Shown: in pieces, positions 1,754 to 64,000 of the stretch | How positions within the stretch are numbered: position 1 is the stretch's first letter | Layout: each line of letters opens with the position of its first letter | DNA from: Hypanus sabinus | Taxonomy: Eukaryota | Direction of reading: 5' to 3' | DNA: 64,000 nucleotides | NCBI RefSeq assembly: GCF_030144855.1 | Contig: NC_082721.1 | Coordinates: forward strand, 41,354,001 to 41,418,000 | Position numbers and translations under genes: made by a program | The notes under the pieces: generated by a model | What the model saw: only the letters and a program-made list of their open reading frames with translations | Told to the model about the DNA's origin: nothing | Databases searched by the model: none

Positions 1754-2685
1754 CAGGCAGTCCCTGGGATACGTATGAGTTCCGTTCCTGAGTCCGTCTT
1801 TAAGTCAGATTTGTACAGAAGTCGGAACAAGTACATCCGGTATTATTTAGCGTCAGTTAGTCAAACGTTTGTCTTAGTATATAGTATATATTTTACCTAT
1901 CTATGCATATAAAACACTTAAGAACCGTATGTATTCCAATAATTAAACCACTGCGCTGCTTAGCAATAATTGTAGCTTTCATCAGGGTAGCGCGTTTCAC
2001 ATGCTCCATTATTCTCACTTTATCTGTTATCCTTTAAAATTGTTCTGATCGTTGACTGACTGTAGCCTAACGCTTTTCCAATGACCGATGGCGTTTCACC
2101 TCTTTCCAAATGCTTCATTATTTCCACTTTATTTTCAATCGTGATTGCTTCCCATCAATGGAACAGAAACACTGCAGGCAGCGGCTGCTGACCTGCGCCG
2201 GCTCCCGAGGTCCGCTGGGTCCCAAGGACCACCATATTGAGACAGGCTAAATGGGACAAGTGGGGGCTGTGCTGGGTTTGAGTGTTTCATCATCCACAAT
2301 ATTCCATGTGGGAATTTAAACTGGAGGTGGCAGAGTTTTTTTTACAAGGTCGAGTTGCGAGCTCGACATCAACCCAGCACGGATGGTATGGGAGTCTCCG
2401 GATCGACATCAACCCAGCACGGGAACGGTCTATCACTGGATCGAACTCAGGAAACTCCATTCTCCAGCCCGGCGATGATCTCACTGCGCCACCAGCCAAT
2501 CGGAATGGGTGGGGGGGGTGGGGTCAGGGTGAATCTTACTTAAAAAAATTTAAGCCAATTACAAAGTTAAACACCCAACACAGTGTCAATGGCAACTACT
2601 TAAAATGGCGGACGGCGTTCTCCTTCCTCCGTTCGTAAGTACGAGTTTTTCATAAGTCGGACATTCGTGACTCGGGGACTACCTG
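1754..2685 (-). mobile_element. Non-autonomous Tigger/pogo-type DNA transposon (MITE-like) with a transposase HTH remnant
   Basis: TA TSDs at 1752-53 and 2686-87; imperfect TIRs CAGGCAGTCCCTGGGATACG / CGTGACTCGGGGACTACCTG. Minus strand 2151-2030 reads EAITIENKVEIMKHLERGETPSVIGKALGYSQSTIRTILKD, the CENP-B/psq-type HTH at the N-terminus of Tigger transposases. Confidence 0.9.
2335..2497 (-). mobile_element. tRNA-derived SINE nested in the Tigger MITE
   Basis: Minus strand starts GGCTGGTGGCGCAGTGAG (A box), has GAGTTCGATCC (B box, 2448-2438) and ends in CTTGTAAAAAAA; contains a duplicated 20-mer (TCGACATCAACCCAGCACGG x2). Confidence 0.75.
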
Positions 2686-3799
2686 TATAAGACTCTATGA
2701 AAGTGAAGGTTCATGCATGAGGGATATACAGTGAATGCTTGATTACCAGTGTTCCAGCAAACTGAGTTCCAATGTTGACCCTGTTGTACTCTCGGTGCAA
2801 TGTACATGTTAACACAGGACCTGACTCAGTGCCATTTAGGTCTCGGCTCAGATGCTTCCTTTCAGGTGCCTGTTATTGAAACGCTGAATAACTGAGCATT
2901 TTGTGAAGTTTTGAAGAAATTATTCCTCAGTATAGTGGAGGTGAATGTGCTATCAAGATTGTGCTCAAACACTGGAAGGTTTGAAAGTGGTGAAAGAATC
3001 AGTAAGCATCAACCTGGGAGAGTAGAAGGGCTGAAGAACTGTCTCAACAACTTTAAAACAAGCAGTTTACCTCCAATCTTTTGTTGAGGGAGGCAATATC
3101 ACTGGAAAAGAAGCTGGATGAACGTTTGGAAAAGATTTGGGAAAAGAAACAGGGTGAGGATTTCCATCTAACATGTATAAAGGCTTAACAACTCCTTTCT
3201 GCATTGTAATGAAGAAGTACATGCTTGATCCAGAGGGTGAGGATATATTGGGAAGGGGCAAGGATTACACTGGCTATTGATTACCCAGTACCAGCCCACT
3301 GAAAACTCTGAGTCTGTGACAGGATTAGGTTGGATATGTTCTATTAATAAGATCTTTGCCACTGTTTGGGCTTGGACCATCAATATTTAGACTAGGTTGT
3401 AGTTTCGAACCCATGCTGTCTCCTCGTGGACTCCCATCTAAAATAGTGAACAGAAGCAGGGACTTGAACTGGCCAGAATCTGAGGATCTGCCATCTGGTG
3501 GACACATTCATCTGCTGCACAACAAAGTACAACTCTCATTGACCAGCGCAAAGGAAGAAGCACTTTTTCAGTTGTTTACAGCCAATTTAAATCATAGGAA
3601 TGAATTTGGGTTGCCAAAGTTATTTAGATGTTGAAAGCATACCTTTTGGACAGTGAGCATGTATTGCCAATCCTGATTAGATATTGCAAACAAGCATATC
3701 TTGTCTTGGCCTATGGCCATGCTTTAGTGGTGGGAGTACATATGATGTGAGACCAGTGTGCACAATGGCCTAAATGTAAATGTTGCTTGGTTCCATAAG

Positions 3800-5531: not shown

Positions 5532-7305
5532 AAAGTTCAAAGTAAATTTATTATTAGTGTACATACACATCTCCACATACAACCCTCAGATTCTTTTTCT
5601 GTGGGCATACTTGGAAAATCTATAGAAGAGTAACTGTAAACAGATCAATGGACAACAAACTCTGCAAATGCAGATATAAATTGATTGGTTGAGGCATGAA
5701 GGGATACTGAGGGAAGGCAGGAGATTGGGGCTGAGAGGAATATTGGATCAGCCATGATGAATAAGTGGAGCAGACTCGATGGGCTAAAAGGCCTAATTCT
5801 GCTCCTATATCATATGGTCTTATTGTCTAAATAAATAGCAATAAATAATGAGCATGAAATAACAAGATAAAGAGTACTTAAAGTGAGACCATCGGTTGTG
5901 GGGACACCAGATGTAGATTGAGTGTAGTTATCCCCTTTTATTCACAAGCCTGATGGTTGAAAGGTAGTAACAGTTACTGAACCTGGTGCTGTGAGTCCTG
6001 AGGCACCTGTACTTTTTACCTGATGGAAGCAGTGAGAAAAAAACATGTCCTGGTTGGTGAGGATCTTTGATAATGGATGCTGCTTTCCTACGGCAGTGTT
6101 TCATGTTGCTGAATCTACTACCTTTTGTAGGATTTTCCACTCAAAGGCATTGGTAATTCCATACCAGGCCTTTGAGCAGCCAATCAGCACACTTTCCACC
6201 ACACATCCATAGAAGTTTGCCAAGGTTTTTGATGACATTCTGAATCTTCACAAATTCCTAACGAAGTAGAGGCACTGTTGTGCTTTCTTCACAATTATAT
6301 TTATGTGATGGGTCCATGACAGGTCCTCTGAGATAGTGACACCCAGGAATTTGAAGTTACTGACTCTTTCCACCTCTGATCCTCCAAAGATTACTGGCTT
6401 ATGGACCTCTGGTTTCCCTCTCCTGAAGTCCACAATTAGTTCCTTGGTCATATTGACATTGAGTGAGAGGATGTTATTACATCACTCAGCCAAATTTTCA
6501 GTGTCCCTCCTGTATGCTGATTCATCACCACCTTTGATACAGCCCACAACAGTGGCGTCATCAGCAAACTTGAATATGGAGTTTGGAGCTGTACTTAGCC
6601 ACACAGTCACAGGTATAAAGTGAGTAGAGCAGGGTGCTAAGCACGCATTCCTGGTGTGTTCCTGTGCTGATGGAGATGGTGGAGGAGACGTTTTTGCCAA
6701 TCTGAACTGACTGGGATCTACCGGTGAGAAAATCCAGGATCCAATTGCACAAGGCGGTATCGATGCCCAGGTCTTGGAGCTTACTGATTAGTTTTGAGGG
6801 GAAGAAGGTATTAAATGCTGAGCTGTGGTCAATAAAGAGCATCCTGATGTATACATCTTTGCTGTTCAAATGTTCCAGGGTTGTGTGAAGAGCCAATGAG
6901 ATTGCATAGAAGGCTTCGGTACACAAATCGGAGCGGATTCAAGTTGCCAGACTCTGACAGATCCAACTGAGAAAGGAGCTGATATGCTTCAACACCAGCC
7001 TCTCAAAGCACCTCATCACCGTTGGATGGAAGTGCCACTGGGTGATAGTTATTGAAACAGGTTACCATGCTGTTCTTGGGCACCAGTATGATTGAAGCCT
7101 GCTTGAAGCAGGTGGGTACCACACACTGCCAGAGCGAGGGGTTGAAGCTATCTGTGAATACACCATTCAATTGTTCAGCACAGATCTTCAGCATTCAGCC
7201 CAGGTTCTTTGTCTGGAACGGGATGCTTTCCTTGGATTCACTCTCTTGGAGGCAGCCTACAAGTCATCTTCAGGTACTGAGACCAAAGGATCATCAGGAG
7301 ATGTA
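5532..7305 (-). mobile_element. Rex1/Babar LINE, 5'-truncated, frameshifted RT
   Basis: ORF-track peptides [42 protein letters not shown] and TKELIVDFRR...FKFLGVTISEDLSW; (CTTTGAA)-type tail at 5532. Confidence 0.92.
5681..5828 (+). mobile_element. CR1 LINE 3' tail nested in the Rex 3' UTR
   Basis: GATCAGCCATGATGAAT...GGAGCAGACTCGATGGGCT...GGCCTAATTCTGCTCCTATATCATATGGTCTT; the same tail recurs at about 23060 and 50300. Confidence 0.8.
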
Positions 7306-21494: not shown

Positions 21495-22410
21495 TCAGTT
21501 CAAAAGTTCCAAGTAAATTTATTATCAAAATACATATACAAAATACAACCCAGAGATTCATTTTCTTGCAGGCATTCACAGCAAATACAAAGCCCAACAA
21601 AAAAAAACAAGCAAAGTAATCATAATAAAGAAATAGGCAATAAATATCAAGAACATGAGATGGAGAGTCCTTGACTGTGAGTCCATTGGTTGTGGGGACA
21701 GTTCAGGGTTGGGGTGAGTGAAGCTGAGTGAAGTTATCCCCTCTGGATCAAGAGCCTGATGGTTGAGGTGAAACAATTGTCCTTGAACCTGGTGGTTTTG
21801 GGTCCTGAGGCTCCTGAACCTCCTTCATGAGAGCAGCAGTGAATAAAGAGCATTGCCTGCATGATAGGGCTGTCTCATGTTGGATGCCGCCTTCCTGCAT
21901 GTAGATGTACCCAATGGTGGGAGATCTTTGTCAGTGATGGATGAGATGTAGCCACTATTTTTGTAGACTTTCCTGTTGAAGGGCATTGGTGTTTCCATAC
22001 CAGGTGTAATGCAATCAGCCAATATCTTCTCCACTGAACAAATACAGAAGTTTATCAAAGTTTCAGATGACATGCCAAATCTTTTCAAACTTACTGTATA
22101 TAAAGTTAGAGGTGCTGCTGTGTTTTCTTTGTCGTGGGATAAGTGCTGGGCCCAGGACAGGTCCTCTGAAATGGTAACACCAAGGACTTTAAAGTTGCTG
22201 ATCCCCTCCACCTCTGATTCCACAATATGGACTGACTCATGGATGTCTGGTTTCCTCCATATGAAGTCTATATTCAATTCCTTGGTCTTACTGATATGGA
22301 ATGAGATATTGTTGTGGCACCACTCAACCAGATTTTCAACTTGCCTCCCATATACTAATTCATCACCACCTTTGATCAGCCAATGAGAGTTGTGATGTCA
22401 GCAAACCTAA
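21495..22410 (-). mobile_element. Rex1/Babar LINE, 5'-truncated
   Basis: SEVEGISNFKVLGVTISEDLSWAQH (ORF 21825-22277); RT FADI motif at about 22400; tail at about 21500. Confidence 0.88.
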
Positions 22411-24089
22411 ATAGGAATGTAATTTCAATTATTTGGTAAATTGATTTATTACTGTCACATGTACCAAAGTACAGTCGGAAATTTTGCATGCCATTCATTC
22501 AGATCATTTAATTACAACAGTGCGTTGAGTAGTACAAGGGAAAATAATTAAAAATGCAGAAAAAAGAGTAACAGTTCCAAAAAAAAATGCAGTGCACACA
22601 AGCAATAAGGTGTAAGGGCCATGACAAAGTATGTTGGAAGGTCAAGATTTCTTCCTAATTTTTGAGAGGAATCTGGATGAGGAAGCCAGTGTCAGCAATT
22701 GTGACCAGGTAATAGAATATTACACATGGAAACAGGTCTTCATCCTTCTAAGCCTGCACTAGTCTTCAACCACCCTTTCATTATCCCACATTTCTATCAA
22801 CTCTCCCAGATTTTACCACTTACCCACACATTAGCAGCACCTTACAATGGCCTATTAACCCACCATACCACACATCATTAGGACGTGCAAGGAAACCCAT
22901 GCGGTCACAATAGAAAGTGTAAACCTCATGAAGACCACACCTGAGGTCAGGATTGGACCACGGTTGCTATATAGCTGCAGCAATGTATCATATATTATCA
23001 GATCAGACATATGATTCTGTATCCTTATCTAACTTGGGCCGTGTGTGACTCCATACTACTGCCATGATGAAATGGAAGAGCAGGCTCGATGGGCCAAATG
23101 GCCTAATTTTGCTCCTATGTCTTATGGTGTTATGGTCTTTGACATGAACTGCCCTGTGAACGGTAAACTATTTTGTTTGTAAATATCTTATGATGGTCAA
23201 ATGAACACCAACCTAACCAACAAAGTTCTGTGAACGAATGAGTCCGAACAGATTATTTGGCAAATCATACTCCTAAACTTAGGGCCTGGAATTCACTTTT
23301 CATCCTTTCTACCTTAAAGAACTTTGTTTCCTGGGATATTTGAAATATTTCTAACAAATCGATCTTGAGATCCCTTCAGCAGAAAGCTCGGATCCCCATT
23401 GTGGGAATGCAAGTATTGATTGGATCCTGAGTTGGATATAGGTGTGCAAGCCCAAGCTCAAATGATGCAGAGTCCTCTCCAGAGTCTCCGGAATTTGTAG
23501 TAATTACTGGAGTTACAGCCTGACTCCCAAAGCAAGACCACTCAGATCTACCTTCATCCCAAGACCACAGTTGAGATTAGTATACATATGGCATTTATCA
23601 CTATTCTGTGGACTGTTGCTTAAAGTGGCAGCCTAATATTACTTTCTCAGCTACATTGGTATTTAAACAGTTGAAAGGGAATCAGCCCGAGTTATCCCAT
23701 CATGGATGGAGCATATCCAAACCTGCTCTACTTGGAGTAGACTTGATGGGTCCCATATTGGCAGTGAAGCATCATTGTCAATCCCAAGAAGCTACCTTAG
23801 AAGAAAGGAAAAAAATGGTGAGGAGCATTTTTGATAAATATTCACTGGTGTCATGGTATGATTTCAGAGGAATAGTTCATCGCTTATGTGGTGTGGCAGA
23901 AACTAAGGATGGTGGAGATTATCTTCATGGCCTTCTTCCTGATCAGCAGTCTCTTGCTTTCTCACCATCTCCAACACTCCCTATAAACATACCAATTTGC
24001 TATCAAAATGTATTTGCACAGGCCTACCTTTCTTCCCTGTAGCCATGGTGAGACCCAGCCTAATTGTCCTTAACACAAAATGAACTTGC

Positions 24090-28139: not shown

Positions 28140-28235
28140 ACAGCACACACAAAATGCTGGTTGAACACAGCAGGCCAGGCAGCATCTATAGGGAGAAGCG
28201 CTGTCGACGTTTCGGGCCGAGACCCTTCGTCAGGA
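28140..28235 (-). mobile_element. Young Penelope-like terminal fragment inserted in CR1
   Basis: CpG-intact copy ACACAAAATGCTGG...GTCGACGTTTCGGGCCGAGACCCTTCGTCAGGA. Confidence 0.85.
28203..28235 (-). ncRNA. Minimal type-I hammerhead ribozyme motif (PLE-associated), core intact, helix I truncated
   Basis: Minus strand uc-CUGACGA-a-gggucucggccc-GAAA-cg-UC-gac: conserved CUGANGA and GAAA boxes, helix II, and a vestigial palindromic helix III (ACGU). Confidence 0.7.
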
Positions 28236-31264: not shown

Positions 31265-31680
31265 TTCAAAGTTCAAAGTTTCAAAGTAAATGTGTTGAAG
31301 TATATGTACAACTATATGAGAGGTGGTTGTTGTGGCACCGAACTGCGAGATTTTCAATCTCCCTCCTATATGCTGATTTGTCACCTCCCTTGATTTGGCC
31401 AAAGGCTGGTGTGACATCAGCAAACTTAAATATGACACTGGACCTGTGTTTAGCCTCACAGTGATGAGAATAAAGCAAGTAGAGCAGAGGGTTAACCACA
31501 CAGCCTTGTGATGCACCTGTGCTGATGGAGATCATGGAGGAGATGTTGTTGCCAATCCAAACTGACTGGGGTCTGCAAGTGTGGAAATCAAAGATCCAAT
31601 TACACAAGGAGGTATTGAGACCAAGGACTTGAAGCTTATTGATTAGTTTTGAGAGGAAGATAACATTGAAAGCTGATTCA
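31265..31680 (-). mobile_element. Rex1/Babar LINE RT fragment (internally deleted)
   Basis: CNWIFDFHTCRPQSVWIGNNISS..STGASQGCV..PLLY..IFKFADVT, joined directly to a tail-like sequence. Confidence 0.85.
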
Positions 31681-34317: not shown

Positions 34318-36432
34318 AAAAGTTCAAAGTAAATTTTATTATCAAGGAATAATCAGAAGTTTTCTGATGACTCTGCCATTGTTGGATGCATCAGCAAGGG
34401 AGATGAGGCTGAGTACAGGGCTACGGTGGGAAACTTTGTCACATGGTGCGAGCAGAATCATCTGCAGCTTAATGTGAAAAAGACTAAGGAGCTGGTGGTG
34501 GACCTGAGGAGGGCTAAGGCACCGGTGACCCTTGTTTCCGTCCAAGGGGTCGGTGTGGACATGGTGGAGGATTACAAATACCTGGGGATCCAAATTGACA
34601 ATAAACTGGACTGGTCAAAGAACGCTGAGGCTGTCTACAAGAAGGGTCAGAGCTGTCTCTACTTCATGAGGAGACCAAGGTCCTTTAACATCTGCCGGAT
34701 GATGCTGAGGATGTTCTACGAGTCTGTGGTGGCCAGTGCTATCATGTTTGCTGTTGTGTGCTGGGGCAGCAGGCTGATGGTAGCAGACACCAACAGAATC
34801 AACAAACTCATTCGTAAGGCTAGTGATGTTGTGGGGGTGGAACTGGACTCTCTGATGGTGGTGTCTGAAAAGAGGATGCTGTCCAAGTTGCATGCCATCT
34901 TGGACAATGTCTCCCATCCACTCCATGAAGTACTGGTTGGGCACAGGAGTACGTTCAGCCAGAGACTCATTCCACCGAGATGCAACACTGAGCATCATAG
35001 GAAGTCATTCCTGCCTGTGGCCATCAAACTTTACAACTCCTCCCTCGGAGTGTCAGACACCCTGAGCCAATAGGCTGGTCCTGGACTTATTTCCACTTGC
35101 ATAATTTACCTATTATTATTTATGGTTTCATATTGCTATATTTCTATGTTATTCTTGCTTGGTGCAACTGTAACAAAACCCAATTTCCCTTGGGATCAAT
35201 CAAGTATGTCTGTCTGTCTGTCTGTAATACATATATGTCACCATATATAAACCTGAGATTCATTTTCTTATGGGTATACATAGGAAATCTATAGAATGGT
35301 AATTATAACAGGATCAATGAAAGATCAGCCAGAGTGCAGGTAGAGTGCAGATGCAAAGATAAATAAATAGCAGAAATAACGAGAACATGAGATCCTAAGA
35401 TAAGGAGTCCTTGAAGTGAGATCATTGGTGGTTGGAACATGACAATGTTGGGACAAGTGAAGTTGAGTGTAGTTATCCCCTTTTATTCAAGAGCCTGATG
35501 GTTGAGGGGTAGTAACTGTTCTTAAACCTGGTGGTGTGAGCCCTAAAGCTCTTAAACTTCTTCCTGATGGCAGTAGCAAGAAGAGAGCATGTCCAGGGTG
35601 GTGGGGATCTCTGATGATGGATGCTGCTTTCTTATGACAGTATTTTATGTAGATGTGCTCAATGGTTGGAGGGCTTTACCATAATTTACTAGGCTGAATC
35701 CACTACTTTTTGTTGGATTTTCTGTTGAAAATTGATGTTTCCATACCTGACTGTGAAACAGCCAGTCAATATACTCTTCACTGCACATCTATAGAAGCTT
35801 GTCAAAGTTTCAGGTGTCATGCGGAACCTCTACAAACTCCTAAAGATGTAGAGGCGCTTCCGTGCTCTCTTCACCATTGAACTCGTGCTGGGTCCAGATC
35901 AGGTCCTCTGAAATGGTAAATAAAAGCTTGCTGACCTGCTCCACCACTGATCCTCTGTTGAGGACTGGGTTATGGACCTCTAGCCTCTGTCTCCTGAAGT
36001 CTATAATCGGTCCCCTGATCTTGGTGACATTGAGTGCCAGGTTGTTGTTATGACACCACTCAGCTAGATTTTCAGTCTCCCTCCTTCATGCTGGTTCATC
36101 TGCACCTTTGGTTCAGCCCACAACAGTGATGTCACCAGCGAACGTGGATTGGAGCTGTGCCACACAGTTGAAAGGGTAAAGTGCATAGGGCAGGGGGCGA
36201 AGCACACAGCCTTGTGGTGCATCTGTGCTGGTAAAGATCATGGAGGAGATGTTGTTTCCAATCCAAACTGACTAGGGTCTGCAAGTGAGGAGATCCAGGA
36301 TCCTATTGCACGGGGAAGTATTCAGGCAGGGTCTTGGAGCTTACTGATTAGTTTTGAGGGGCTGATGGTATTGAATGCTGAGCTGTAGTCAATAAAGAAC
36401 ATCCTGATGTATGCATCTTTGCTGTCCAGATG
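34318..36432 (-). mobile_element. Older Rex1/Babar LINE whose 3' tail is split by a younger insertion (34353-35225)
   Basis: Tail AAAGTTCAAAGTAAATTTTATTATC at 34318 resumes at 35226 (ATACATATATGTCACC); decayed RT motifs run up to [21 protein letters not shown] at about 36430. Confidence 0.88.
34354..35073 (+). CDS. Uninterrupted RT/C-terminal frame of a young 5'-truncated Rex1-type LINE (element about 34353-35225); not a host gene
   Basis: The frame opens at QKFSDDSAIVG (catalytic DD) and runs 240 codons to TAG without a stop; (TGTC)n tail at about 35207-35225; possible AATA TSD. Confidence 0.9.
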   Translation, partial: QKFSDDSAIVGCISKGDEAEYRATVGNFVTWCEQNHLQLNVKKTKELVVDLRRAKAPVTLVSVQGVGVDMVEDYKYLGIQIDNKLDWSKNAEAVYKKGQSCLYFMRRPRSFNICRMMLRMFYESVVASAIMFAVVCWGSRLMVADTNRINKLIRKASDVVGVELDSLMVVSEKRMLSKLHAILDNVSHPLHEVLVGHRSTFSQRLIPPRCNTEHHRKSFLPVAIKLYNSSLGVSDTLSQ

Positions 36433-37184
36433 GTGTCTAGAAGCTAATCCCTTTAGGTAATATCCATACCCTCCCTTCCTGCACATTCAAGTGCCCATCT
36501 GAAAGCCACTCAAGCATCTTTGTCATATTTAACTCTTATGGTTCTGATGAAAGGTGTGTAACTACAAATATGAGCTGTTTCTCTTTCCTCATATGCTGGC
36601 TGACGTGCTGGGTGTTCCCAATTTCGTTTTGTTTCAGAGACTCAACTCTCTACTCACCAGCCTTCCTTCATTGTGCCTTAACCTCACAGATATACCACCC
36701 CTTATGCGAGCACTTTCAATTCGGCCATCTGGATATGGAGTAAAGCAGACTCAGTGGATCAAGTAGCACTTGTGGAACAAAAGGAATTGTTGACAACTCG
36801 GGTCCTAATGCGGCAGCGTGCAGATACCGCTCACCCCACTGAGCATGTCCAGCAGTCAGTTGCTCCTTCACAGAAACTGAATTGGCCTTTCCATGACGAG
36901 TTTACACATTTCTCACACACAGCTCAAAGCAGAGTGTACAGTGAATTGGTACTCCAAAATGTAATGAGTAATTTATTTGAAAATCAATGTGCCAATAACT
37001 GATGGGATATATAATAAATTAAACAGCATTTACATTACAATGGGAGTGTGTCACAAAGAGGGTTTAGTTACACTCCATCCTGGTCAGGATATCACTGATG
37101 GCACAATGAGATATCTTAAAAAGGGAAACGTCATTCCACTTGTCCAAAGTGAGGTAAGCCCCTCATCCTTATGTCCCGGTCTCA

Positions 37185-51770: not shown

Positions 51771-52446
51771 TAAAGTTTAAACTTCTAGCTTGGAAAACAT
51801 CCTCTAGATACCATGCTTTCTGCATGATACAGCTGACCTAATTGCAACTATACAATGGACAATGCCAATTTGCTTCCAAATTTTATCATATCTGTTTTAT
51901 TCCGGAGCACTGATTATTAATCAAATTTGCAGACTCAGAATTTTGCTTCACAAAGTGTTTAATCTTCTGGACTCAGTGCCCTGTACTGCTGAGCAACGTA
52001 ATGTGTATAGAATGTGGTGCAGTATCAGCAAAAAATGGTGTGCATACGCCCAGTGACATAGACCCTTACTCAAATTTACAATTACACTCAACACTAATCA
52101 AGGAAATGTGTGTCCTTCAAGTCCCAGCCCATTAGGAAGATAGTAGAATCTGCCAAAATTCCTTTCACTTTTCCATTTAAGAAAGCAAGAGACATCATTA
52201 GGGCTGGATCTCGTTCCTGGTCTCAGGCCAGCACTTGAGTGCTTGGGTTGTTCACTTCCACTCACCATAAATTTTGTAGCAATAAACCAGTGGATCAAGC
52301 TGAGTCTTTTGACAGGAACTTACTTGCTGAAATGCTCAGAGTTTTAACCTTGTATATTTTGTCTTCTATCTCTAGGCTTGAAGCGAATCCAATCTGAAGA
52401 CACACAGTTACACTGAAACTGGCTTTGACTTTCAGGCCAGTGTTAA

Positions 52447-52549
52447 ATGTCAGTGCCAAGGATGCTGTTACTTACTCACCTGATCATGCCAGCAGTTGTC
52501 TTCTTAACGGCTTTGCTGTCCTCAGTGTTGGCTGATACCACCATTGAAG
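52447..52549 (+). CDS. Putative first coding exon (signal peptide) of a secreted or type-I membrane protein; exon 52376-52549
   Basis: Acceptor ttttgtcttctatctctag|G at 52375/76. In-frame TAA immediately precedes the ATG at 52447. Peptide MSVPRMLLLTHLIMPAVVFLTALLSSVLADTTIE has n/h/c regions and a V-x-A cleavage site. Strong donor GAAG|gtaagc, phase 1. Unique, non-repeat sequence. Confidence 0.72.
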
Positions 52550-54859
52550 GTAAGCCTTTCTAACTTAGCCAGATTTGTGATGACTTTACTACAAATGATA
52601 GACCACATCACCAATGGTATTGATAAGCACACCGTCCATTGTTAGCATGATGAACCTGTTCATCATTTATTTTTTTCCAATTTCAGTTGAATATCATAAA
52701 TAACTCAAGGATCTGAGTTTCTTCCTGGTGTTAGAAGTATTAAATTGTACAGTGTAGAAGCAAGTCCTTCAGCCCACCTAGCCCATGCTGATGTTGATCC
52801 CTATCTATGCTAATCTAATGAGTCCACGTTAGGCTATAGTCCCCTATGCCTTTCTAATCCAAGTACATGACTGAATTTATCTTAAAATATTATAACTGTA
52901 TCTGCTTCCACCAGCTCCTCTGGCAGCTCACTCTCAGAGTTAAAAACTTACCCATCAGATATCCTTTAAATTTCTTCCCATTTCATCTTAACCCTTTGCG
53001 CTCATAATTTTATAAACATCCATGAAGTCACCCCCCCCACCCCCCCCCAGCCTATGTTCCGCTGTGAATAAACCCAGCCTCTCCAGTCTCTGCTTATGAT
53101 CACAGACCACAAAGCAAGATTGTGGTGAATCTTTTCTGTGCTCTCTCTAATGCTACTGTATCTAAGATCATCAAAGCTCCTCGCAATCCAGCTCATGCCA
53201 CTTTCTTGTGGCTACCATCAGATTAGAAGTGCAAAATCCTGGTCCCACACCACCAGGTTTGAGAACAACTACATTCCTTCAACCATTCAGTTCTTGTAAG
53301 TAATCTGCATAACATTATTTCAGTATTACAACATAATGACCACTTTGGCTACTTGGCATTACAATGGATATTTGTTTGATTTGTTTTTCTTTCTTGTTTA
53401 ATGTTGAATAATTTAAGGTTTTATTGTGAATGATGCTGATGCAAGGAAGCTTTACATTGTACTTGTGCATACAGTAAACTCAACTTTGACTTTGGTGTCC
53501 TATGTTTAGTGTAGTCTCTGGACCTGTACATAACTCTCTAAGTGCAGTCAATATTTTCTATAGCTGCTTGATATTTCTTATTTTTTCTCAATCTCCCTTG
53601 CTAATGGTACACATTCCAAACATAGGTCCTGTAGTTCCATCAGTGCTAATCCCCAGCATGTTGGCTTCCTGCTTTTCCTGTTGTTTATTTTTGTCAGCTT
53701 ACTTTAACCCTTCCACACCTGAGGAAGGTGAATACATGCTCTGCTCTCAGACTTCATCAAGTCCCACCCAGCTCTCCACCTGAGAAGAAGGAGCATTGTC
53801 CACAAACCACTCATCATCCAACGCAATGCATCAGCCGCATGGCCGACCTACCCATAGCAGATTACCCAGAAGCTTGTAGGTGGTCTGGGAGCAATACTTT
53901 AGTGCCATTTATTTTACAGAAACGATAAGTATTATGCACTTGTTTGCACATTTAAAATGTTTGAAGTATAAACTATTGAGAAACCTTCCGGGATATATTC
54001 AGCCAGTCCTTGGCAGGAAGGGTTCTGATGCTGGCACTAATACCTGATATATTAACTCTCCACAGATGCTGTCTGACCTCTCTTTATCTCTGATTTCCAA
54101 TATCTGCAGCAATTTTCTTTCCATTTCTCTAAGCAGTGACCTCTGTCTGCTTGGACTGCTGAACACCACCATTTCTGCAAAGTTAGAGCTCAACTTATAT
54201 CTGCTCATTGAGTTCTGTTGAGCTTCAGTCACCACCCTCACCTTCCCTACTGACGGTGGAGACTGTTGCTGGGGCCTAATTGCACTGACACCTTCAACTT
54301 TCTTGCTCTTCCCAATGCTGGACACATTAACTGTATATTTCACAGGCAAAACAATATTTGGATGAAATCAGCCTTAACTAAAATGTTTGTTTATTGAATC
54401 AGAAATAACTTAGGACAATCGATCAAACTGACTTTGACAGAAGAGATGAAACAGTTCCAGTGAATGATACTCTGGAATTTCTTTGTAAATTGCAACATTA
54501 TAGGTGTTGATCGGTGTCATTAGCACTTGCTCAGATTGGCTAACCTTTGTCACGTGTGCACACACATGCGTATTTGTGCAGAAACACACTCAGTCGCGCA
54601 CACACCTACACATACACACCTGTACACACATGTATGAAACCTATTTGGAAAATGTACTGATCATGCACACACCTGCAGCTCCTCAGATCCTGCACCATGA
54701 GGAGATCTTTGTGAGATCGTGGCAGATCACGAGGGCCCCTTGGGAATGCCACTCTTCAGCGAGATGTACTGAGGCCCCAACAAAAAAGCAGATTTGTGCA
54801 TTGCACTGGCACCACAGTATTCCCACTAATCTTCCTTTTAAAGCAGGGGCTCCCAGCCA

Positions 54860-55150
54860 ATAACAACCAAATTTTAAAAAAATACCTCAGCATTGCATCC
54901 TTGCTCTTATATTCTAGTCTTCTTGAAATGAATGCTAATATTGCATTTTCTTTCCCTACCACCAACTCAACCTGCAAGCTAACCTTTAGGGAATCCTGTG
55001 TGAGAACTCCCAAGCCCTTTCGTACCTCTAATTTTTGAATTTTCTCCTGATTTAGAAAATAGACTACACCTTTAGTCTGTCTACTAAAGTGCACAGATGT
55101 GCCTACACTTCGATACATGACAATCCATCAGCCACTTCCTTGCTATTCCA
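54860..55150 (-). mobile_element. CR1 LINE fragment
   Basis: LGVLTQDSLKVSLQVELVVGKENAILAFISRRLEYKSKDAMLR. Confidence 0.85.
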
Positions 55151-56184
55151 TAGACTTTAAGGGTGAATTTTGCAGCAGATAAAAATTCCAGAGCCACGGT
55201 GAAGTTGAAAGCTCAGTGATTGAGCAGGGGAGTAGGCACTATGTTAGTCATGTCCAAAATGCTCTTTGCCTTCTTTTCATTCAACCAATTACATTTGTTG
55301 TTGCCATGGCAGTAAAATAAAAGGTGCTGCTGTCACTGTTGATAAGCAATGCTATTTTATTGGGTGGAATCCTGAGGAATGCCAACATCCCAGTGTCCAA
55401 GGGGACTTGTTGCACATCTTTCAGGGGCTGTGAGTGATACAGCAGCTTGCATTCTGTGTGCCACAGAACATGGTTCTGGTTGTATTTTAGAAAACATCGC
55501 CTCGAGCTTTGCTTGATTACTCTTGGGAGCTGGAGGGGAGTTTCCAATTATTCCTAAATGACCACAAATTCTGCTTATGTGATTTATGGTTTTCCCAAGA
55601 CAGTATGTGGTTAAGGAATAGTTTAAGCGATGCTTGTAGTTGTACTGAGGTCTGCTGCATGAAGATGGCAAGCTAGATGGGGATGGTTATGTGTGCGTGT
55701 CATCGGTGTAACAGATAAAAGTCTGTATTCAGATCTGATGTGCAAGCTGTGGTAGGAAACATAATCGCACCAGTACCGCAGCCTTCTTTGTTCTGCTCTA
55801 TCTCTGATTGACAGTTTTGAGTGGTGCAATGGAGAAGCTCACTGGCTTCTGGCTTTAGGTCCAACCTTAACCGATAGAATGATGTTCGCTCTAACAGCTG
55901 GCACAGAAGCTTCAAGTTCAATAGGTTTGGTCAGTCCTTTACAGTTGATGTTCTATGGCACGGGGCTGACCTTGGTTGACCAACAAGAGTACATCCTACA
56001 CCTCTGCTCTGTCATTTGGTAAGATCATGTCTGATTCTCAACTCGTGTAAACTGTCCTTCATGCATTGATTCCTCAGTGTTCAAAAAAATCATGGATCCC
56101 ATCCTAGAATGTACCCATTCACTGAATAACCACATCTCCCTGAATTGGTGAAGGTTACAGAGCTTTGGATTAAATAGAGACAGA

Positions 56185-56330
56185 CGAACCTCCAAATGCT
56201 GGAGTAACACACAAAGCACTGGAGGAACTCAGCAGATATGTCTCAACCTGAAACATCAGCTGCCCATTTTCCTCCATAGCTGCTGCCTGACCCACTGAGT
56301 TCCTCCAGTGCTTAGTGTGGTGCTCTTGAT
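56185..56330. repeat. Palindromic mini-element built from two opposed Penelope termini
   Basis: Perfect 19-bp inverted repeat AAGCACTGGAGGAACTCAG (56214-32) / CTGAGTTCCTCCAGTGCTT (56295-313). Confidence 0.8.
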
Positions 56331-57519
56331 AATCCTGCTTCTCCTCACCTCAATCCTAATCCCCCTCAGAGGGTCCTCCTGGACAATGCAGTCCATTCTG
56401 AGGAAGCAGTGCTACCTTTTTTAATCTACTGTAGTAAACGGTGGTCGGGGTAGAAACTGGAAAAGTGTCGCCCTGGTACAGGAGAGGGAGCTTATTTCTA
56501 GAATAAGCCTAAGGGTTTAATGGTGAACCAGAGGAGAAGGAGATGTTGCTGGCTTTATCCCCTTGAGTAGGAATGTTAGTTTCCATCATGGAAAACCACT
56601 GGATAAAGTTGACAATATTCACTGAGCCTTAGATGTAAAGCCTCTGTCTCACTACACCTGAGAGCCAGTTTATCTCGTGTATATGGACTTTGTTTATTTT
56701 CTGTGAATCTGTGGGTTTCCTCTGAGTGTGACAGTTCCCTCCCACATGCCAAAGACGTGTGGGCCAGTAAATTAATCTGCTGCTGTAAATTGCCCTGGAA
56801 CGTGGTGACTCTTTGCAAACTGCTCTCGGCAGATCTACTCATTAGCAGATAGTGTGGAGGTGACTGGCAGAAACTGAGGAGAGTTAATAAGTAAAAAAGG
56901 ATTAAGATAGGATTAGTTTAAGTGGGCTGTTGATGGACTGCCCATCCCCTCCCCTGCTTCTGATTCTGGCTTCTGCCTCCTTCCTTTCCAGTACAGATGA
57001 AGTGTTTCTGCCTGAAATGTTCCCCTCCAGAGAAGCTGCCTAACCTGCAGACTTCCTCAGCATTTGGGAGACTCTCTTGTGGCATTTTATAGGAGTTGGA
57101 TAGGGTGATGGAAATCACGTCAGAGATGTTGTCTGTCTGTTGAAAAGTCACACATTTATTGTAAAGAGTCACCATATAATGTAGAAGGTGAAAGGTTAAG
57201 ATGCAAATAAGGATTCTGGAGCAGGGAAGAGGGTGGAGGTGAATTGTGTGTAAAATAAAAGCTGCCTTTGGTCACATGACTGACACACTCCTTGCTCATT
57301 TGGTTAATGGTGGCAAAGTGACAGTCCCTCACGGGTATTCTGACCCTCTCAGATGAGACACGTTCCAGGAGATGAATAAAACCTGCTCAATCCCATCACG
57401 CCTGTCTTGAGCGGTGGTATGCAGTGGGACTGAGGCCCCAGCTGAACATGAAGCTTCAAACAAGGTGGGTACTATCAGCCATGGAAATTCATGGAGCTTG
57501 CTTGAACGATGCGGTCCTG

Positions 57520-57855
57520 AGTGGTTCCGTCAACCAGAACGTCACAGCTGCTTCACAGCTTCGGCAATCAGGGTTCAATACTGCTGTCGGGTGCTCTCCA
57601 CGTACAGTCTGCTTGTTTTCCATGGATTTCCTCAGAGCGTTCTGCTTTCCCCGCACTCTCCAAAGACATGCCGAATGGTAGGTAAATTGGCCACTGTAAA
57701 ATGCACATAATGAATGGTAGAATCTAGGGGAGCCAGTGGGAATGTGGGGAGAATAAAATGGGGACAGTATAGGATATGTGTAGATAGGTGCTGGATGGCC
57801 AGCATGAACTAGATGGGCTGAAGGCTCCATTTCCATGCTGTGCGACTCCATGTAA
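57520..57855 (+). mobile_element. V-SINE (HE1-like)
   Basis: B box GGGTTCAATAC, CCAAAGACATG..GGTAGGTAAATTGGCCACTGTAAA and ATGGGCTGAAGG..TTTCCATGCTGT tail. Confidence 0.75.
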
Positions 57856-58484
57856 TTACCCACCCTTACCCCCACTTAGTTGAGCTGTCCTACTCTCCTT
57901 CCACAGGATTGCATCTTTGAACGCATCTTTCCAGTTGTTCTCTGAGAATTTGTGGAGCCACTCAGTCCATTGATTGATGAATTTCACAAGTCCAGGCATA
58001 CCAACTTTAGTTTGCCTTCATTGTTTTGCCTTTGTCTGCCAATGGAACGAGAGAGCGGAGAGTATAGAATGTCCATGTAAATACTACTGGAGCCATTAGA
58101 AGGGAAAAAATAAAGCAATGCAAAGGAAACTGGGGATGTGAGATGAGTATGTGATATGACAGTTGCATCTTTTTGTCATGCCCTATGTTGTTGAGGCCTC
58201 AGGTAGATAACTTCCCTCACACTGGGAATTAGAGGCAATAGCTTTGGTTCCTGTTGCACATCCCCCCAACCCACCTCACAAAACCATTGTCAAAATGTCT
58301 CTGTTATGACATTGGATTGCAGAACAGCAATCATACACTAAGTGTGTATTACACTGACATATTTGTTATATTTGCACCAAAAATGAAAGGGAAAGGGTTT
58401 ATTTTAATGCTATTTTGTAAACCAAAATATAGATTAATTCCAAATGAATTCCAGAATAAGAACAACGCTTGGAGGGACTGCTAA

Positions 58485-59480
58485 AACAGAATCCAAATCA
58501 GGTTTAATATCACCAGCATTCATCGTGAAATCTGTTGTCTTTGGAGCAGTGATACAAAGTGATATGTAATAATAAAGAAAAAAATTGTGAATTACAATAA
58601 GCACATATAATAAGTAGTGCAAGAATGAAAATTTAAGAAGTAGTGGGGTAGTGTTTATGGGTTCAGTGGTCATTTAGAATCCAGATGGCAGAGGGGAAGA
58701 AGCTGTTCCTTTCTGAAGTCCACAATCAATTCTTTGGTCTTACCGATGCTGAATGCAAGATTTTGCAGCAAAGCCACTCACCTACCTAGTATACCTCACT
58801 CCTGTATCCCCTCTCGACACTATCTGAGATTCTGCCAACAATGGGTATATCATCACCATGTTTATAGATGGCATTTGAGCCTTGCCTGGCCACACAGGCA
58901 TGGGTGTAGCAGGATAGAGCAGTGGGCTAAGCGTACACCCCAGAGGTGCACCTGCGGTGATTGTTCATGAGGTGGAGTTATTTTTTCTGATGCGCATCGA
59001 TCTTGGTCTTTTGGTTAGGAAGTTGAGGATCCAGTTGCACGGGGAGGTACAGAGGCCCAGATTTGGAGCTCTTCAATCAGAACTGTAGGAATTATTGTGC
59101 TTAACACTGAGCTGCAGTCAATAAACAGCATCCTGACATAGCTATTAGTGTTGTCCAGGTGATCCAAGGCTGCGTGAAGAGCCAATGAGATTGCATCCGC
59201 CATAGACCTATTGTGGCAATGGGCATATTGCAGTGGGTCCAGGTCTTGCCGAGACAGAAGTTTATTGTAGCCATAACCAACCTCTCAGAGCACTTCATTA
59301 CCGTTGATATGAGTGCTGTTGGACAATAGTCATTAAGGCAGCTCACCCTGCACTTCTTGGGCACTGGTGTAATTGTTGCCCTTTTGAAGTAGCTGAGAAC
59401 TTCCAACTGTAGTACTCAGAAGCTGATCACACCCACCAGTTAGTGAGCACTGGTTTTCAGAGCCCCACCAGGTACACTAA
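58485..59480 (-). mobile_element. Rex1/Babar LINE, internally deleted
   Basis: [33 protein letters not shown] and [28 protein letters not shown]. Confidence 0.88.
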
Positions 59481-60465
59481 ATGGGTTCTGCTTTCTTCAC
59501 AAATGGTCTGCTAGAAGAACGCAGTTCAAACAACATGAGTGTGTATGTGGGAGGGGTGGGTGGAAGGATAGGTCAATGTTTTGGGTCAAAATCCAGCATC
59601 CTATTCTTCTTCCACAGATACTGCTCAACCCATTGAGTCGCTGCAGTAGCTGATTTGTTGCTCCTGATTCCAGCATTTCCAATCTCTCACGTCTTTATTC
59701 AACAACTGGTTTGCTTGAGTAACTAATTAAGCAAAAGCCCATTCTTACCCATTATGCAGGGTATGTCCAAGGAACACCTGAAAAGTGACACCAGTGAGAA
59801 AGTGGAAAGTGGAGCAGCAAGCTGCTGGAAGAGCTCAGCAGGTCGAGCAGTGTCTCCGGGAGGAAGGGAGGCAGGGTTTCAATCTGAAACGTAGACAATT
59901 CCCTCTCTCGCGTAGATGCTGCTGAACACGCTGAATTTTAGCAGCAGGTTGTTTGTGAACAAGAAAATGCAGTCTGACACTGAAGCAAGACTCTCTACAG
60001 GAACAACCTGTGAAGTGCTCAGATCCACTGGCAGAGGAAAGCTTCTGTTCTGAGCACGGCGTGGGGACGACCAACCGTAATATTGTTTATGCAAGGGTTG
60101 TTTCATTGCCATATGGAAATTGGTTGAACTGAATGAACAAAGAAACCTAGTGAAATTGCTGCTTTATCCCTTATATAAAAGGTATCTTAATTTTTTTCTG
60201 TGACCTCTTCTAGTACGGAGGCAATATTTAATGTTCATCCCTAGTTTCCCTTGAGATGATGGTGGTGAGCTGCCTTCTCTGTAGTCTATGACCTGTCATA
60301 AAGTGAGCTGCAGAACTTAATTCCACACTGATATATTTCCTCATCACGATGGTGGGAGGGCTGGAGTTTGGCAGTATGTACCTGAAGTAGTTGCAAGCCA
60401 ATGGAGTCCTTGTCTTTTTGGATGTATTTTGATTCAAAAGTACACTTTATTCAAAATAAAGTGTA

Positions 60466-61724
60466 GACAATAGACAAGAGGTGCAGAAGTAGACCATTCG
60501 GCCCTTCGATCCTGCACCGCCATTCTGAGATCATGGCTGATCATCTACTATCAATATCCGATTCCTGCCTTGTCCCCATATCCCTTGATTCCCCTATCCA
60601 TAAGATACCTATCTAGCTCCTTCTTGAAAGCATCCAGAGAATTGGCCTCCGCTGCCTTCTGAAGCAGTGCATTCCAGACCCCCACAACTCTCTGGGAGAA
60701 GAAGTTTTTCCTTAACTCTGTTCTAAATGACCTACCCCTTATTCTTAAACCATGCCCTCTGGTACTGGACTCTCCCAGCATCTGGAACATATTTCCTGCC
60801 TCTATCTTGTCCAATCCCTTAATAATCTTATATGTTGCAATCAGATGCCCTCTCAATCTCCTTAATTCCAGCATGTACAAGCCCAGTCTCTCTAACCTCT
60901 CTGCGTAAGACAGTCCGGACATCCCAGGAATTAACCTCGTGAATCTACGCTGCACTTCCTCTACAGCCAGGATGTCCTTCCTTAACCCTGGAGACCAAAA
61001 TTGTACACAATACTCCAGGTGTGGTCTCACCTGGGCCCTGTACAAATGCAAAAGGATTTCCTTGCTTTTGTACTCAATTCCCTTTGTAATAAAGGCCAAC
61101 ATTCCATTAGCCTTCTTCACTGCATGCTGCACTTGCTCATTCACCTTCAGTGACTGATGAACAAGGACTCCTAGATCTCTTTGTATTTTTCCCTTACCTA
61201 ACTCTACACGGTTCAGATAATAATCTGCCTTCCTATTCTTACTCCCAAAGTGGATAACCTCACACTTATTCACATTAAACGTCATCTGCCAAGTATCTGC
61301 CCACTCACCCAGCCTATCCAAGTCACCCTGAATTCTCCTAACATCCTCATCACATGTCACACTGCCACCCAGCTTAGTATCATCAGCAAACTTGCTAATG
61401 TTATTCTCAATGCCTTCATCTAAATCGTTGATGTAAATCATAAACAGCTGTGGTCCCAATACCGAGCCCTGTGGCACCCCTCTAGTCACCACCTGCCATT
61501 CCGAGAAACACCCATTCACCGCTACCCTTTGCTTTCTATCTGCCAACCAGTTTTCTGTCCATGTCAATGTCTTCCCCCCAATGCTATGAGCTTTGATTTT
61601 ACCCACCAATCTTCTATGTGGGACTTTATCAAATGCCTTCTGAAAATCGAGGTACATTACATCCACTGGATCTCACTTGTCTAATTTCCTGGTTACATCC
61701 TCGAAAAACTCCAATAGATTAGTC
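60466..61724 (-). mobile_element. Young 5'-truncated CR1 LINE with 7-bp TSD
   Basis: AAGTGTA at 60459-65 and 61725-31; (TATTGTC)n-type tail; long open RT frame. Confidence 0.95.
60551..61666 (-). CDS. CR1 ORF2 reverse-transcriptase domain and C-terminus (371 aa, truncated; not a host gene)
   Basis: YLDFQKAFDKVPH, GVPQGSVLGP, KFADDTKL, HLEYCVQFWSP; one TGA just upstream (about 61673) in the same frame. Confidence 0.95.
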   Translation of the reverse strand: MDVMYLDFQKAFDKVPHRRLVGKIKAHSIGGKTLTWTENWLADRKQRVAVNGCFSEWQVVTRGVPQGSVLGPQLFMIYINDLDEGIENNISKFADDTKLGGSVTCDEDVRRIQGDLDRLGEWADTWQMTFNVNKCEVIHFGSKNRKADYYLNRVELGKGKIQRDLGVLVHQSLKVNEQVQHAVKKANGMLAFITKGIEYKSKEILLHLYRAQVRPHLEYCVQFWSPGLRKDILAVEEVQRRFTRLIPGMSGLSYAERLERLGLYMLELRRLRGHLIATYKIIKGLDKIEAGNMFQMLGESSTRGHGLRIRGRSFRTELRKNFFSQRVVGVWNALLQKAAEANSLDAFKKELDRYLMDRGIKGYGDKAGIGY

Positions 61725-64000
61725 AAGTGTACTGTATATACAAAAAGAAAAAACAGTGCAAAGTTCTTTACATTCTTAGTAACATTTGCATTGAGTGGTG
61801 TTAACATTTATCATTTTAACATAGCAACATTGTCATCACTTGGCCTTCAGGCGATAACCCCTTTCATTATTTGAGGAGCTTCCCCACCATACCTAGATCC
61901 TCACTGTCCGGGGCAGAATATTTTGTTCTTGGGAGGTGCGGTAGAAGAAGCAAAATGGAGTTGCAGCAGCGCATGTTGTATCTTCCTGACAGTCGTGGAG
62001 ACCTAGAGTGTGAGACAGCCTCCATATCTGCCTTGTAACAGTAACTGCACAAAAACACTGTTACAAGGTTACAAGGAAGTTCCATTGTTAATGATCCCTA
62101 AGTTCTTTCTCAGTTCAAGTACATGTAGTTGATGTGAGTCAGCCAATGGACACTGGCATCACAAGAGATGTTCAGATGTCACTGGATCGTGAAGGGAATT
62201 CCGACAGACCCTGAATAATAACGACCCTTTTTTACACAATTAGGGTTGTGAGGCATCACCCTGAGCAGAGTCAGTTTGAATAATCCGTGGAATTTTAATT
62301 TTGGGGAGCAAGATTGTATAATTTGGAAGGATGCCAGGAGTATTGTTAGCAAGTTGGCTTTTCAGGAATTTCTTAAAAACTGTACTGAAGGTAAAAAATT
62401 TTCAGTGAGGCTGAATCAAAGCTTGGGTACCCTGAAAGATTTGAGCCCCTGATCACCAAGTAAATCTGGTAGACAGAATGAAGTGAAGGACTGGACTGGA
62501 AGTCGTTGCCTGTGGTTTTCATGTGGTTGAGGTTGCAATGAAGAAGTGGATCAAGATTCCAAAGGTAAGGGCAGTTGTTGTGGAACTTGGTAGAATGGAA
62601 ATGGTGAGGTGTTGAGTCTTGATGGATGAACAGTATAGTTGAACTTACCTGAAAAAAAAAACTGATTAAGTGCATCATTTAAGGATAACTACATGAGTTT
62701 GTCATGTAAGTTCACACTTGAAGTGTTGGTGGTAGTCCTATATCTCATGGAACTTTAGAACAAAGCTCCTGACAGGAATATAGATCTGATAAGATTCAGC
62801 CTATTGTGACTTTACATACCAGTAGCTCTTTGTGACAAGTTAGAAACTGAAGAATGAGGGCCCTGCATTGGTACATCTAGTTTATGAAGCCATCTTTTTC
62901 ACAGCAAGAAACAAACTTCTGGGGAGGTCTTCAGTGGGTCAAGGAATATCTGTGGAGACAAAAGGGTAGTCATCCTTTCAGGTCAAGTCCTTAAGTCAGG
63001 AAGCTTGTGTCTCCAGTCTCTTTTACAGTCCTTTCATTGTAACTATGGTCAGAACACTATTGTTTTTGGCCTAGAAACCAGTCATGAGATACAGAGATTT
63101 TCTTTTGTTGATGCTTTCAGCAGATTCTCAAACTGCTTTCAAAATGTTCCACAGCACATCTTTTTCCTGACAGCTGATAAACATGTGGTAGTTATTGGCT
63201 GTGACCTTTCAAGCAATACTTGTTGCAGATGCTGTGGCTGCTAATCTTAATGCCATTCATTTCTGTAGGAAATCTGCCCAGTTCTCCCTCCTTCCCCCCA
63301 CCATTCTTCTTTCAACTTGAATGTTGAGGGTGTAAGTCTTCCTTTGAGCTACAGCTCTGTGGTGATGGCTTTTATGGAAATACATGTCAAATCAAATGGG
63401 ATCTTCCTATTCCTTTTGATTCAGAATGACATCCATTTATCTCACCCTTTGAGGAATCGCGCCGTTGTCATAGAACCTTAAGCCGAAAGGTGACTTTCGG
63501 ATGACTTTCCATCAAAGCCCTGCCTCAGAGTTTTTAGGGAGCAAAAGGGAGGCAAGGATGTTGGTTCAGGCAGTAGAGGAGGTCACTTGACATAGCATGC
63601 CAGCACTTTGAATGAGCTGTCAAGTTCCCAGTCCTCTCTTCCCATGTCCCTGCAATATTCCCCTTTCAACAATATATTCTTTTTTTTTTTGCATCACGTT
63701 TTCAGTGAGCACGCTCCAGGCCATAACAACATACTGTGTTATAAATATGCAAACATCACAGCTGTTTGTAATTCATTCTGTTGCTACTTTAAATCACCAC
63801 CATCCCGTTACCTACTCCATTGCCTTTAGAACATATTTTTGAAATACAAATAATTTTGATCACCTTAACTAGACCTCCCCTTAGCCTTTTCTGCTTTAAG
63901 GAAACCAAATCATCATCTCTATATTCAACATTCCATTTAATAAATCCCTTCTGCATTCCAGGATTTTGATATTCTTGTTGAACTGTGATGCAACTTATAA

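What the first reader, a model, noticed from the sequence alone, without database searches (positions are those of the whole stretch)
52376..52549. Hidden signal-peptide exon: the only host-gene signal in 64 kb
Seen: a polypyrimidine tract plus AG, 71 nt of 5' UTR, an in-frame TAA directly before the ATG, a 29-residue signal peptide ending V-L-A|D, five mature residues (DTTIE) and a consensus phase-1 donor AAG|gtaagc. A second possible acceptor (ttgactttcag|) lies at 52435, and the in-frame ATGs of M6 and M14 have better Kozak context. Known: a signal peptide on its own phase-1 exon after a non-coding exon is typical of Ig-superfamily receptors, RTKs and matrix proteins. Inference: the window is mostly intron of a large cell-surface or secreted protein gene. 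The exon is too short for the ORF track, and I cannot name the gene.
Basis: partly seen in the sequence, partly recalled or inferred. Interest (0 to 1): 0.7.

Follow-up and report, generated by a model that had tools for sequence, protein, structure and literature searches.

The report
Expressed signal-peptide exon, stingray gene
A 174-base stretch in otherwise transposon-filled stingray DNA is very probably a real, transcribed exon that starts the coding region of an unnamed secreted or membrane protein with a signal peptide; this is an ordinary gene part, not a new kind of element.

Summary
These are an AG acceptor behind a pyrimidine tract, 71 nt without ATG, TAA directly before the ATG, a 34-codon signal-peptide-like ORF, and a phase-1 AAG|GTAAGC donor. 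Sequence alone is weak evidence: Markov shuffles give 0.2 such candidates per window (both strands).

The stronger evidence comes from public sequencing runs. In 14 small, transcriptome-sized runs of five organisms, every indexed 31-mer held from a 551-nt stretch lies inside the 174-nt exon. None of the 44 flank or boundary-crossing words is held. Genome-sized runs hold flanks and exon alike. That is the signature of a spliced RNA with ends close to those proposed, and it shows the upstream boundary is used, not only the inner acceptor at 52435.

All three ATGs in the exon are in the one frame that stays open to the donor. No phase-1 exon candidate lies in the remaining 11.4 kb, so the next intron is probably long.

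The gene could not be named because all protein searches were blank.

The parts
52344..52375 (+). Acceptor region. It has a branch-point-like TTAAC (52344-52348, A at 52347, 28 nt before the AG), a pyrimidine-rich tract, and AG at 52374-52375.
   Evidence: Read directly. A crude acceptor score puts it in the top 0.5% of 4596 AG sites on the + strand (the matrix was written from memory and used for ranking only).
52354..52361 (+). TATA-like TATATTTT inside the pyrimidine tract. It is the basis of the rival reading that 52376-52549 is a first exon with a start site near 52380-52391.
   Evidence: Read directly. CCAATCT, an initiator-like and CCAAT-like motif, lies at 52389-52395. Not tested.
52376..52549 (+). 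The exon as proposed, 174 nt.
   Evidence: X1 and X2 hold 11 of its 12 indexed words, and those are all 11 of the words they hold in 52200-52750. X3 holds 9 and 9, X6 and X7 hold 4 and 4, and X8-X14 hold 3 and 3. There is no copy elsewhere in the window.
52376..52446 (+). 5' untranslated part, 71 nt. It has no ATG in any frame and stops in all three frames.
52434..52435 (+). AG of a weaker internal acceptor (ttgactttcag|g). An exon using it would start at 52436.
   Evidence: Its score is in the top 4.5% of AG sites. Runs holding 11 of 12 exon words cannot start at 52436, so it is not the only acceptor used (inference).
52444..52446 (+). In-frame TAA directly before the start codon.
52447..52533 (+). 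Predicted signal peptide, 29 codons. The n-region is MSVPR, the hydrophobic core is residues 6-24, and the c-region is SSVLA with V at -3 and A at -1. In-frame alternative starts are M6 at 52462 and M14 at 52486.
   Evidence: Translation and hydropathy. The cleavage site follows the -3/-1 rule only; no trained predictor was available.
52534..52549 (+). First mature residues DTTIE plus the first base (G) of codon 35. The split codon makes the intron phase 1.
   Evidence: by arithmetic.
52550..52555 (+). Splice donor GTAAGC after AAG.
   Evidence: Its score is in the top 0.2% of 3686 GT sites.

Best explanation
52376-52549 (+) is a genuine, transcribed exon of a single-copy stingray gene. It is most likely an internal second exon joined through the AG at 52375 to an unseen non-coding exon upstream. 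It carries the last 71 nt of 5' UTR, the start codon (M1 at 52447, or the better-context M6 or M14 in the same frame), and a cleavable N-terminal signal peptide ending VLA|D. It adds five mature residues, then splices from AAG|GTAAGC in phase 1 across an intron longer than 11.4 kb to an exon beyond the window. The product would be inserted co-translationally into the ER, so the protein is secreted or membrane-bound. Shown here: the sequence features, exon-only holding in transcriptome-like runs, and partial conservation in related species. Inferred: the exact junctions, the strand, translation, cleavage and the type of gene.
For: (1) The features are exactly as described. (2) Of the 56 indexed words in 52200-52750, fourteen small runs (55-307 million letters) of organisms A-E hold only words inside the 174-nt exon. 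A holds 11/12, B 9/12, C 4/12, D and E 3/12, and all hold 0/44 elsewhere. Genome-sized runs (about 2-2.7 billion letters) hold both: X17 has 9/12 in the exon and about 18/44 outside. Under a model of random contiguous fragments, the joint chance over five organisms is about 2e-5. (3) The donor is in the top 0.2% and the acceptor in the top 0.5% of sites in the window, and a YTNAY branch motif lies 28 nt upstream. (4) Only one frame is open to the donor, all three ATGs of the exon are in it, and all frames are closed upstream of the ATG. (5) The n-, h- and c-region architecture fits, with hydropathy 2.0-2.4 and V/A at -3/-1. (6) An excess of phase-1 introns near signal-peptide cleavage sites, and long phase-1 introns after signal-peptide exons, are documented (PMC1626468 and PMC7259759). 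(7) The stretch is locally unique, not a repeat copy.
Against: No listed holder is on record as RNA; the RNA label of the small runs is the tool's guess. No reads or contigs could be laid, so no junction, strand or exact end was seen. A signal-like ORF reaches 1.7% of arbitrary positions, so a real but non-coding exon could carry one by chance. M1 has a poor Kozak context. A 29-residue signal peptide containing H11 and P15 is somewhat long and atypical. No protein with this N-terminus was found, although those searches had narrow reach. Four other small runs of organism B hold none of the words.
Confidence: 0.68

Rival explanations
1. It is the same coding exon but the first exon of its transcript. 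Transcription would start near 52380-52391, downstream of the TATA-like TATATTTT at 52354-52361, and the apparent 'acceptor' would only be promoter sequence. There would be no upstream non-coding exon, and the 52 kb upstream would be intergenic, not intron.
For: The TATA-like motif lies 25-37 nt before an initiator-like CCAATCT at 52389-52395. Tissue-specific secreted-protein genes often have TATA promoters without CpG islands (general knowledge), and there is no CpG island here. X1 and X2 miss one of 12 exon words, which could be the leftmost one.
Against: The TATA match is imperfect, with T at position 6. The same bases form a top-0.5% acceptor with a branch-point motif at -28. All five small runs of organism B hold exactly the same 9 exon words as B's genome-sized runs, so nothing is lost at the 5' end, where first exons are usually poorly assembled (a soft argument).
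Confidence: 0.2
2. It is a real spliced exon but not a coding start. It would be an exon of a long non-coding RNA, or a 5' UTR exon whose ATG-initiated ORF merely looks like a signal peptide and ends soon in the next exon.
For: A signal-like ORF open to an arbitrary position occurs at 1.7% of positions in this window, which is comparable to the share of real exons that encode signal peptides. No homologous protein was found. There are no other coding exons in 64 kb.
Against: All three ATGs are in the open frame and none is in the other two. There is an in-frame stop just before M1 and no upstream ATG in the exon. The n/h/c regions are complete, the -3/-1 site is good, and phase 1 falls five residues after it, matching the documented pattern (PMC1626468). 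The exon words are conserved in five organisms.
Confidence: 0.12
3. It is a chance ORF in untranscribed, repeat-rich DNA. The small runs would be DNA (capture, reduced representation or fragmentary assemblies) that hold this piece by accident or because it is a conserved non-coding element.
For: The RNA label of the runs is a guess.
Against: In fourteen runs from five studies and five organisms, held words stop at both proposed boundaries and fill the 174 nt. The joint chance is about 2e-5 under random fragments. Close relatives' genome-sized runs hold the flanks at a similar rate to the exon, so exon-only holding is not explained by flank divergence.
Confidence: 0.06

Closest known systems
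Signal-peptide ('leader') exons of vertebrate secreted and cell-surface protein genes, followed by a phase-1 intron near the cleavage site
   Same: It has a short exon holding 5' UTR, ATG and an n/h/c signal peptide. The intron is in phase 1, five residues after the predicted cleavage site, and is long. This is the pattern described statistically in PMC1626468 and PMC7259759.
   Different: The downstream domain exons were not seen, so the family (Ig-superfamily, receptor kinase, matrix protein or other) is unknown. At 29 residues, with a histidine and a proline in the core, the signal peptide is at the long end of the range.
Leader exons of the stingray Ig-superfamily receptor genes noted elsewhere in this scan (for example the NKp30-like gene, note s1-178113)
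   Same: One leader exon followed by phase-1 exons is the stated layout of those genes. The genome is the same.
   Different: Those genes have their V exons within a few kb. Here no phase-1 exon candidate lies within 11.4 kb. No sequence comparison with those leaders was made.
Signal-anchor (uncleaved) N-terminal transmembrane segments of type II/III membrane proteins
   Same: There is a 22-residue hydrophobic stretch close to the N-terminus.
   Different: A short polar c-region with V-L-A before an acidic residue fits a cleaved signal better. This was not tested with a trained predictor.

Membership tests
Eukaryotic cleavable secretory signal peptide (signal peptidase I type) | Short N-terminal n-region with net positive charge | tested here: met
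   MSVPR carries one Arg and no acidic residue. If M6 or M14 is the start, the n-region has no charged side chain.
Eukaryotic cleavable secretory signal peptide (signal peptidase I type) | Hydrophobic h-region of about 7-15 or more residues without charged residues | tested here: met
   The 11-residue Kyte-Doolittle means are 2.0-2.4 for windows starting at residues 7-19. There is no D, E, K or R between R5 and D30, and the core contains H11 and P15.
Eukaryotic cleavable secretory signal peptide (signal peptidase I type) | Polar c-region with small neutral residues at -3 and -1 | tested here: met
   In S-S-V-L-A|D, V is at -3 and A at -1. This is a rule of thumb only; SignalP or an equivalent was not available.
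Eukaryotic cleavable secretory signal peptide (signal peptidase I type) | Located at the N-terminus of a translated protein and cleaved in the ER | not testable with these tools
   No protein with this N-terminus was found. There are no proteomic data.
GT-AG spliced exon of a protein-coding gene | Consensus donor and acceptor with pyrimidine tract and branch point | tested here: met
   AAG|GTAAGC ranks in the top 0.2% of GT sites. The tract plus AG ranks in the top 0.5% of AG sites, and TTAAC lies 28 nt upstream.
GT-AG spliced exon of a protein-coding gene | Present in RNA without its flanking introns | tested here: inconclusive
   Exon-only word holdings in 14 transcriptome-sized runs of five organisms support it strongly.
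GT-AG spliced exon of a protein-coding gene | Reading frame continues into a following exon | tested here: not met
   There is no credible phase-1 exon in 52560-64000. The next exon, if any, lies outside the window, so this result is uninformative rather than negative.
   No downstream exon lies in the window. Pfam has no hit on the 34 residues.

The most novel reading that the evidence does not exclude
The exon could be an unannotated alternative first coding exon. It would give a large, long-intron gene, for instance a neural adhesion or receptor gene, a second signal peptide or a secreted isoform that is conserved among stingrays and absent from public gene models.
Probability: 0.1. Interest if true: 0.25.

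Novelty: new member of a known kind. Interest (0 to 1): 0.12.

Why it matters
If confirmed, it marks the translation start of a stingray gene for a secreted or membrane protein. It also shows that this transposon-filled window lies at the 5' end of a long-intron gene rather than in a gene desert. That helps annotation but teaches nothing new about biology: signal-peptide exons followed by long phase-1 introns are a well-described, common pattern. The practical lesson for the scan is that sequence features of this kind arise by chance about once per five windows. They need RNA support, which in this case exists in indirect form.

Tried and rejected
**Reads**
- No junctions, strand or ends were therefore seen.
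- The look-up of sequencing runs was busy three times and again before it answered.

**Naming the gene**
- phmmer of the 34 residues against 1.84 billion representatives gave 0 hits. My local test shows an exact match would score about 53 bits, so only near-identical N-termini were detectable.
- With six X added to reach 40 aa, it found no candidate of 22-70 aa.
- With alignment A2, whose first row is an unrelated 209-aa open frame of the window used only to set the length filter to 115-366 aa, 184 candidates shared words and none scored. The simulation predicts 36 bits and E = 0.002 for an exact target. It is unknown whether the tool used the second row's words.
- Proteins of 70-115 aa and above 366 aa remain unsearched. 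The third search was not spent, because the only longer carrier is a LINE reverse transcriptase whose relatives would swamp the list.
- Pfam and PDB gave nothing.
- The look-up of encoding contigs for the 38-aa read-through ORF and two neighbouring ORFs found nothing on record.

**Other checks**
- Downstream exon scan: 23 weak candidates, none convincing.
- Rfam: no hits.
- A CpG-rich patch at 2201-2700 was considered as a promoter and rejected, because it looks like a repeat-derived element.
- Earlier-findings look-ups gave the species lead only.

Full report
**Observation**

- A pyrimidine-rich tract (ttgtatattttgtcttctatctctag) ends in AG at 52374-52375.
- 52376-52446 is 71 nt without ATG.
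- TAA at 52444-52446 is in frame and directly precedes ATG 52447.
- 52447-52548 translates to MSVPRMLLLTHLIMPAVVFLTALLSSVLADTTIE.
- Base 52549 (G) is followed by GTAAGC, so the donor AAG|GTAAGC splits a codon after its first base (phase 1).
- The inner acceptor (ttgactttcag) has its AG at 52434-52435.
- M1 has T at -3 and +4, while M6 and M14 have A at -3.
- Hydropathy over residues 7-28 is 2.0-2.4. The c-region SSVLA|D obeys the -3/-1 rule.
- I also noticed a YTNAY branch motif (TTAAC, 52344-52348) 28 nt before the AG.

**Is it more than chance?**

On sequence alone, barely.
- A script asked for an ATG-initiated ORF of 18-60 codons, open to an AG|GTRAG donor, with an uncharged hydrophobic core and a -3/-1 site. 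It finds only this locus on either strand.
- Second-order Markov shuffles of the window yield 0.2 such candidates per 128 kb, and 18% of shuffles have at least one.
- In the real sequence, 1.7% of arbitrary positions are reached by such an ORF.
- My criteria were set after seeing the candidate, so these rates are if anything too low.
- The splice signals themselves are good. With a crude matrix written from memory and used only for ranking, the donor is in the top 0.2% of 3686 GT sites and the acceptor in the top 0.5% of 4596 AG sites. The inner acceptor is in the top 4.5%.

**Evidence from public runs**

Two index searches were possible.

For 52200-52750 (56 sampled 31-mers), the small runs X1-X14 held shares of 0.20 to 0.05. 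These runs have 55-307 million letters, cover organisms A-E and five studies, and are labelled "RNA?" as a guess. Runs of about 2-2.7 billion letters (organisms F, B, G and H) held 0.34-0.63.

For the exon alone (12 sampled words), the same small runs held 0.92, 0.92, 0.75, 0.50, 0.33 ... 0.25. Converted to word counts:

| Runs | Organism | Words held in 174-nt exon (of 12) | Words held in 551-nt stretch (of 56) |
|---|---|---|---|
| X1, X2 | A | 11 | 11 |
| X3 | B | 9 | 9 |
| X4 | A | 6 | 6 |
| X5, X6, X7 | A, C, C | 4 | 4 |
| X8-X14 | D, E | 3 | 3 |

What follows from these counts:
- Every word these runs hold lies inside the 174 nt. None of the 44 words in the flanks or across the boundaries is held.
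- The genome-sized run X17 of organism B holds the same 9 exon words plus about 18 of the 44 others.
- The flanks are therefore present in B's DNA but missing from B's small runs. Four further small B runs from other studies (X25-X28) also hold 9 of 12 exon words.
- Under a model in which a held block is a random contiguous fragment of the 551 nt, the joint chance of five organisms all falling inside the exon is about 2e-5.
- I read the small runs as transcriptome assemblies. The pattern is that of a spliced RNA whose exon ends lie within roughly 20-30 nt of 52376 and 52549. That resolution comes from a mean spacing of about 9 nt between sampled words.
- Runs with 11 of 12 words cannot begin at 52436, so the inner acceptor is not the only one used.
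- Four other small runs of organism B hold nothing, which suggests tissue-restricted expression.

Caveat: no run is on record as RNA, and contigs cannot give the strand. Only the + strand has GT-AG signals at the two boundaries.

**Coding or not?**
- All other frames of the exon, on both strands, contain stops.
- The three ATGs of the exon are all in the one frame that is open to the donor.
- All three frames are closed upstream of M1.
- Any ribosome scanning into this exon would therefore start in the signal-peptide frame and read into the next exon.
- This pattern, the complete n/h/c architecture, and a phase-1 intron five residues after the predicted cleavage site match what is documented. 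PMC1626468 reports an excess of phase-1 introns around signal-peptide cleavage sites. PMC7259759 reports long phase-1 introns attributed to signal-peptide exons.
- I put the coding reading at about three to one over a non-coding exon with a chance ORF.

**Surroundings**
- The window is repeat-rich. It has a LINE reverse-transcriptase ORF at 60551-61666 on the minus strand (RVT_1, E = 1e-21) and several dispersed repeat families.
- Overall CpG observed/expected is 0.24, with no CpG island near the exon.
- 51800-53200 has no other copy in the window.
- A scan of 52560-64000 for phase-1-compatible exons found only weak, short candidates. The intron after the exon is therefore probably longer than 11.4 kb.
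- Whether the 52 kb upstream is intron depends on whether the AG at 52375 is used. The same bases contain a TATA-like TATATTTT (52354-52361), followed at 52389-52395 by an initiator-like CCAATCT. A first exon with its own promoter therefore remains a live rival, at about 20%.

**What failed**
As a result the junctions, strand and next exon are unobserved.
- The gene could not be named. The 34-residue query found nothing among 1.84 billion representatives.
- The word-indexed search is limited by query length. It found nothing among proteins of 22-70 aa (query padded with six X).
- It also found nothing among proteins of 115-366 aa. That query was an alignment whose first row is an unrelated open frame serving only to set the length filter. 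A local simulation predicts 36 bits for an exact target.
- Pfam, PDB and exact-product look-ups were blank. Given their reach, these blanks say little.
- According to an earlier follow-up note (s1-178113, unchecked by me), the genome is the Atlantic stingray.

**Verdict**

The exon is very probably real and expressed (about 0.9). It probably encodes the start and signal peptide of a secreted or membrane protein (about 0.7 overall), and it is probably followed by a long phase-1 intron. This is a textbook gene part. Interest is low.

Noticed in passing
window 60551-61666 (-): A 371-aa open frame with a reverse-transcriptase domain (RVT_1, E = 1e-21). It is a fairly intact LINE copy in the presumed intron, antisense to the exon.
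   Followed up: partly
window 34426-35073 (+): A 215-aa open frame with a weak match to the ALKBH8 N-terminal domain model (E = 4.5e-6). It is probably part of a transposon ORF rather than a host gene.
   Followed up: no
window 5918-6907, 21677-22413, 31328-31676, 35416-36467, 59063-59196: A dispersed repeat family with up to five copies at 60-83% identity (families D1-D3, D5, D7, D11 and D13). Its type was not determined.
   Followed up: no
window 2201-2700: The only CpG-rich patch of the window (GC 0.50, observed/expected 0.76). It has an internal direct repeat of about 20 nt (cgacatcaacccagcacgg, twice) and a G-run, and looks like a SINE-like or tRNA-derived element rather than a promoter.
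   Followed up: partly
   Followed up: no
window 28203-28235: Another first-stage note on this window reports a minimal hammerhead ribozyme in a Penelope element terminus. The Rfam scan of the whole window at gathering thresholds returned no family.
   Followed up: no
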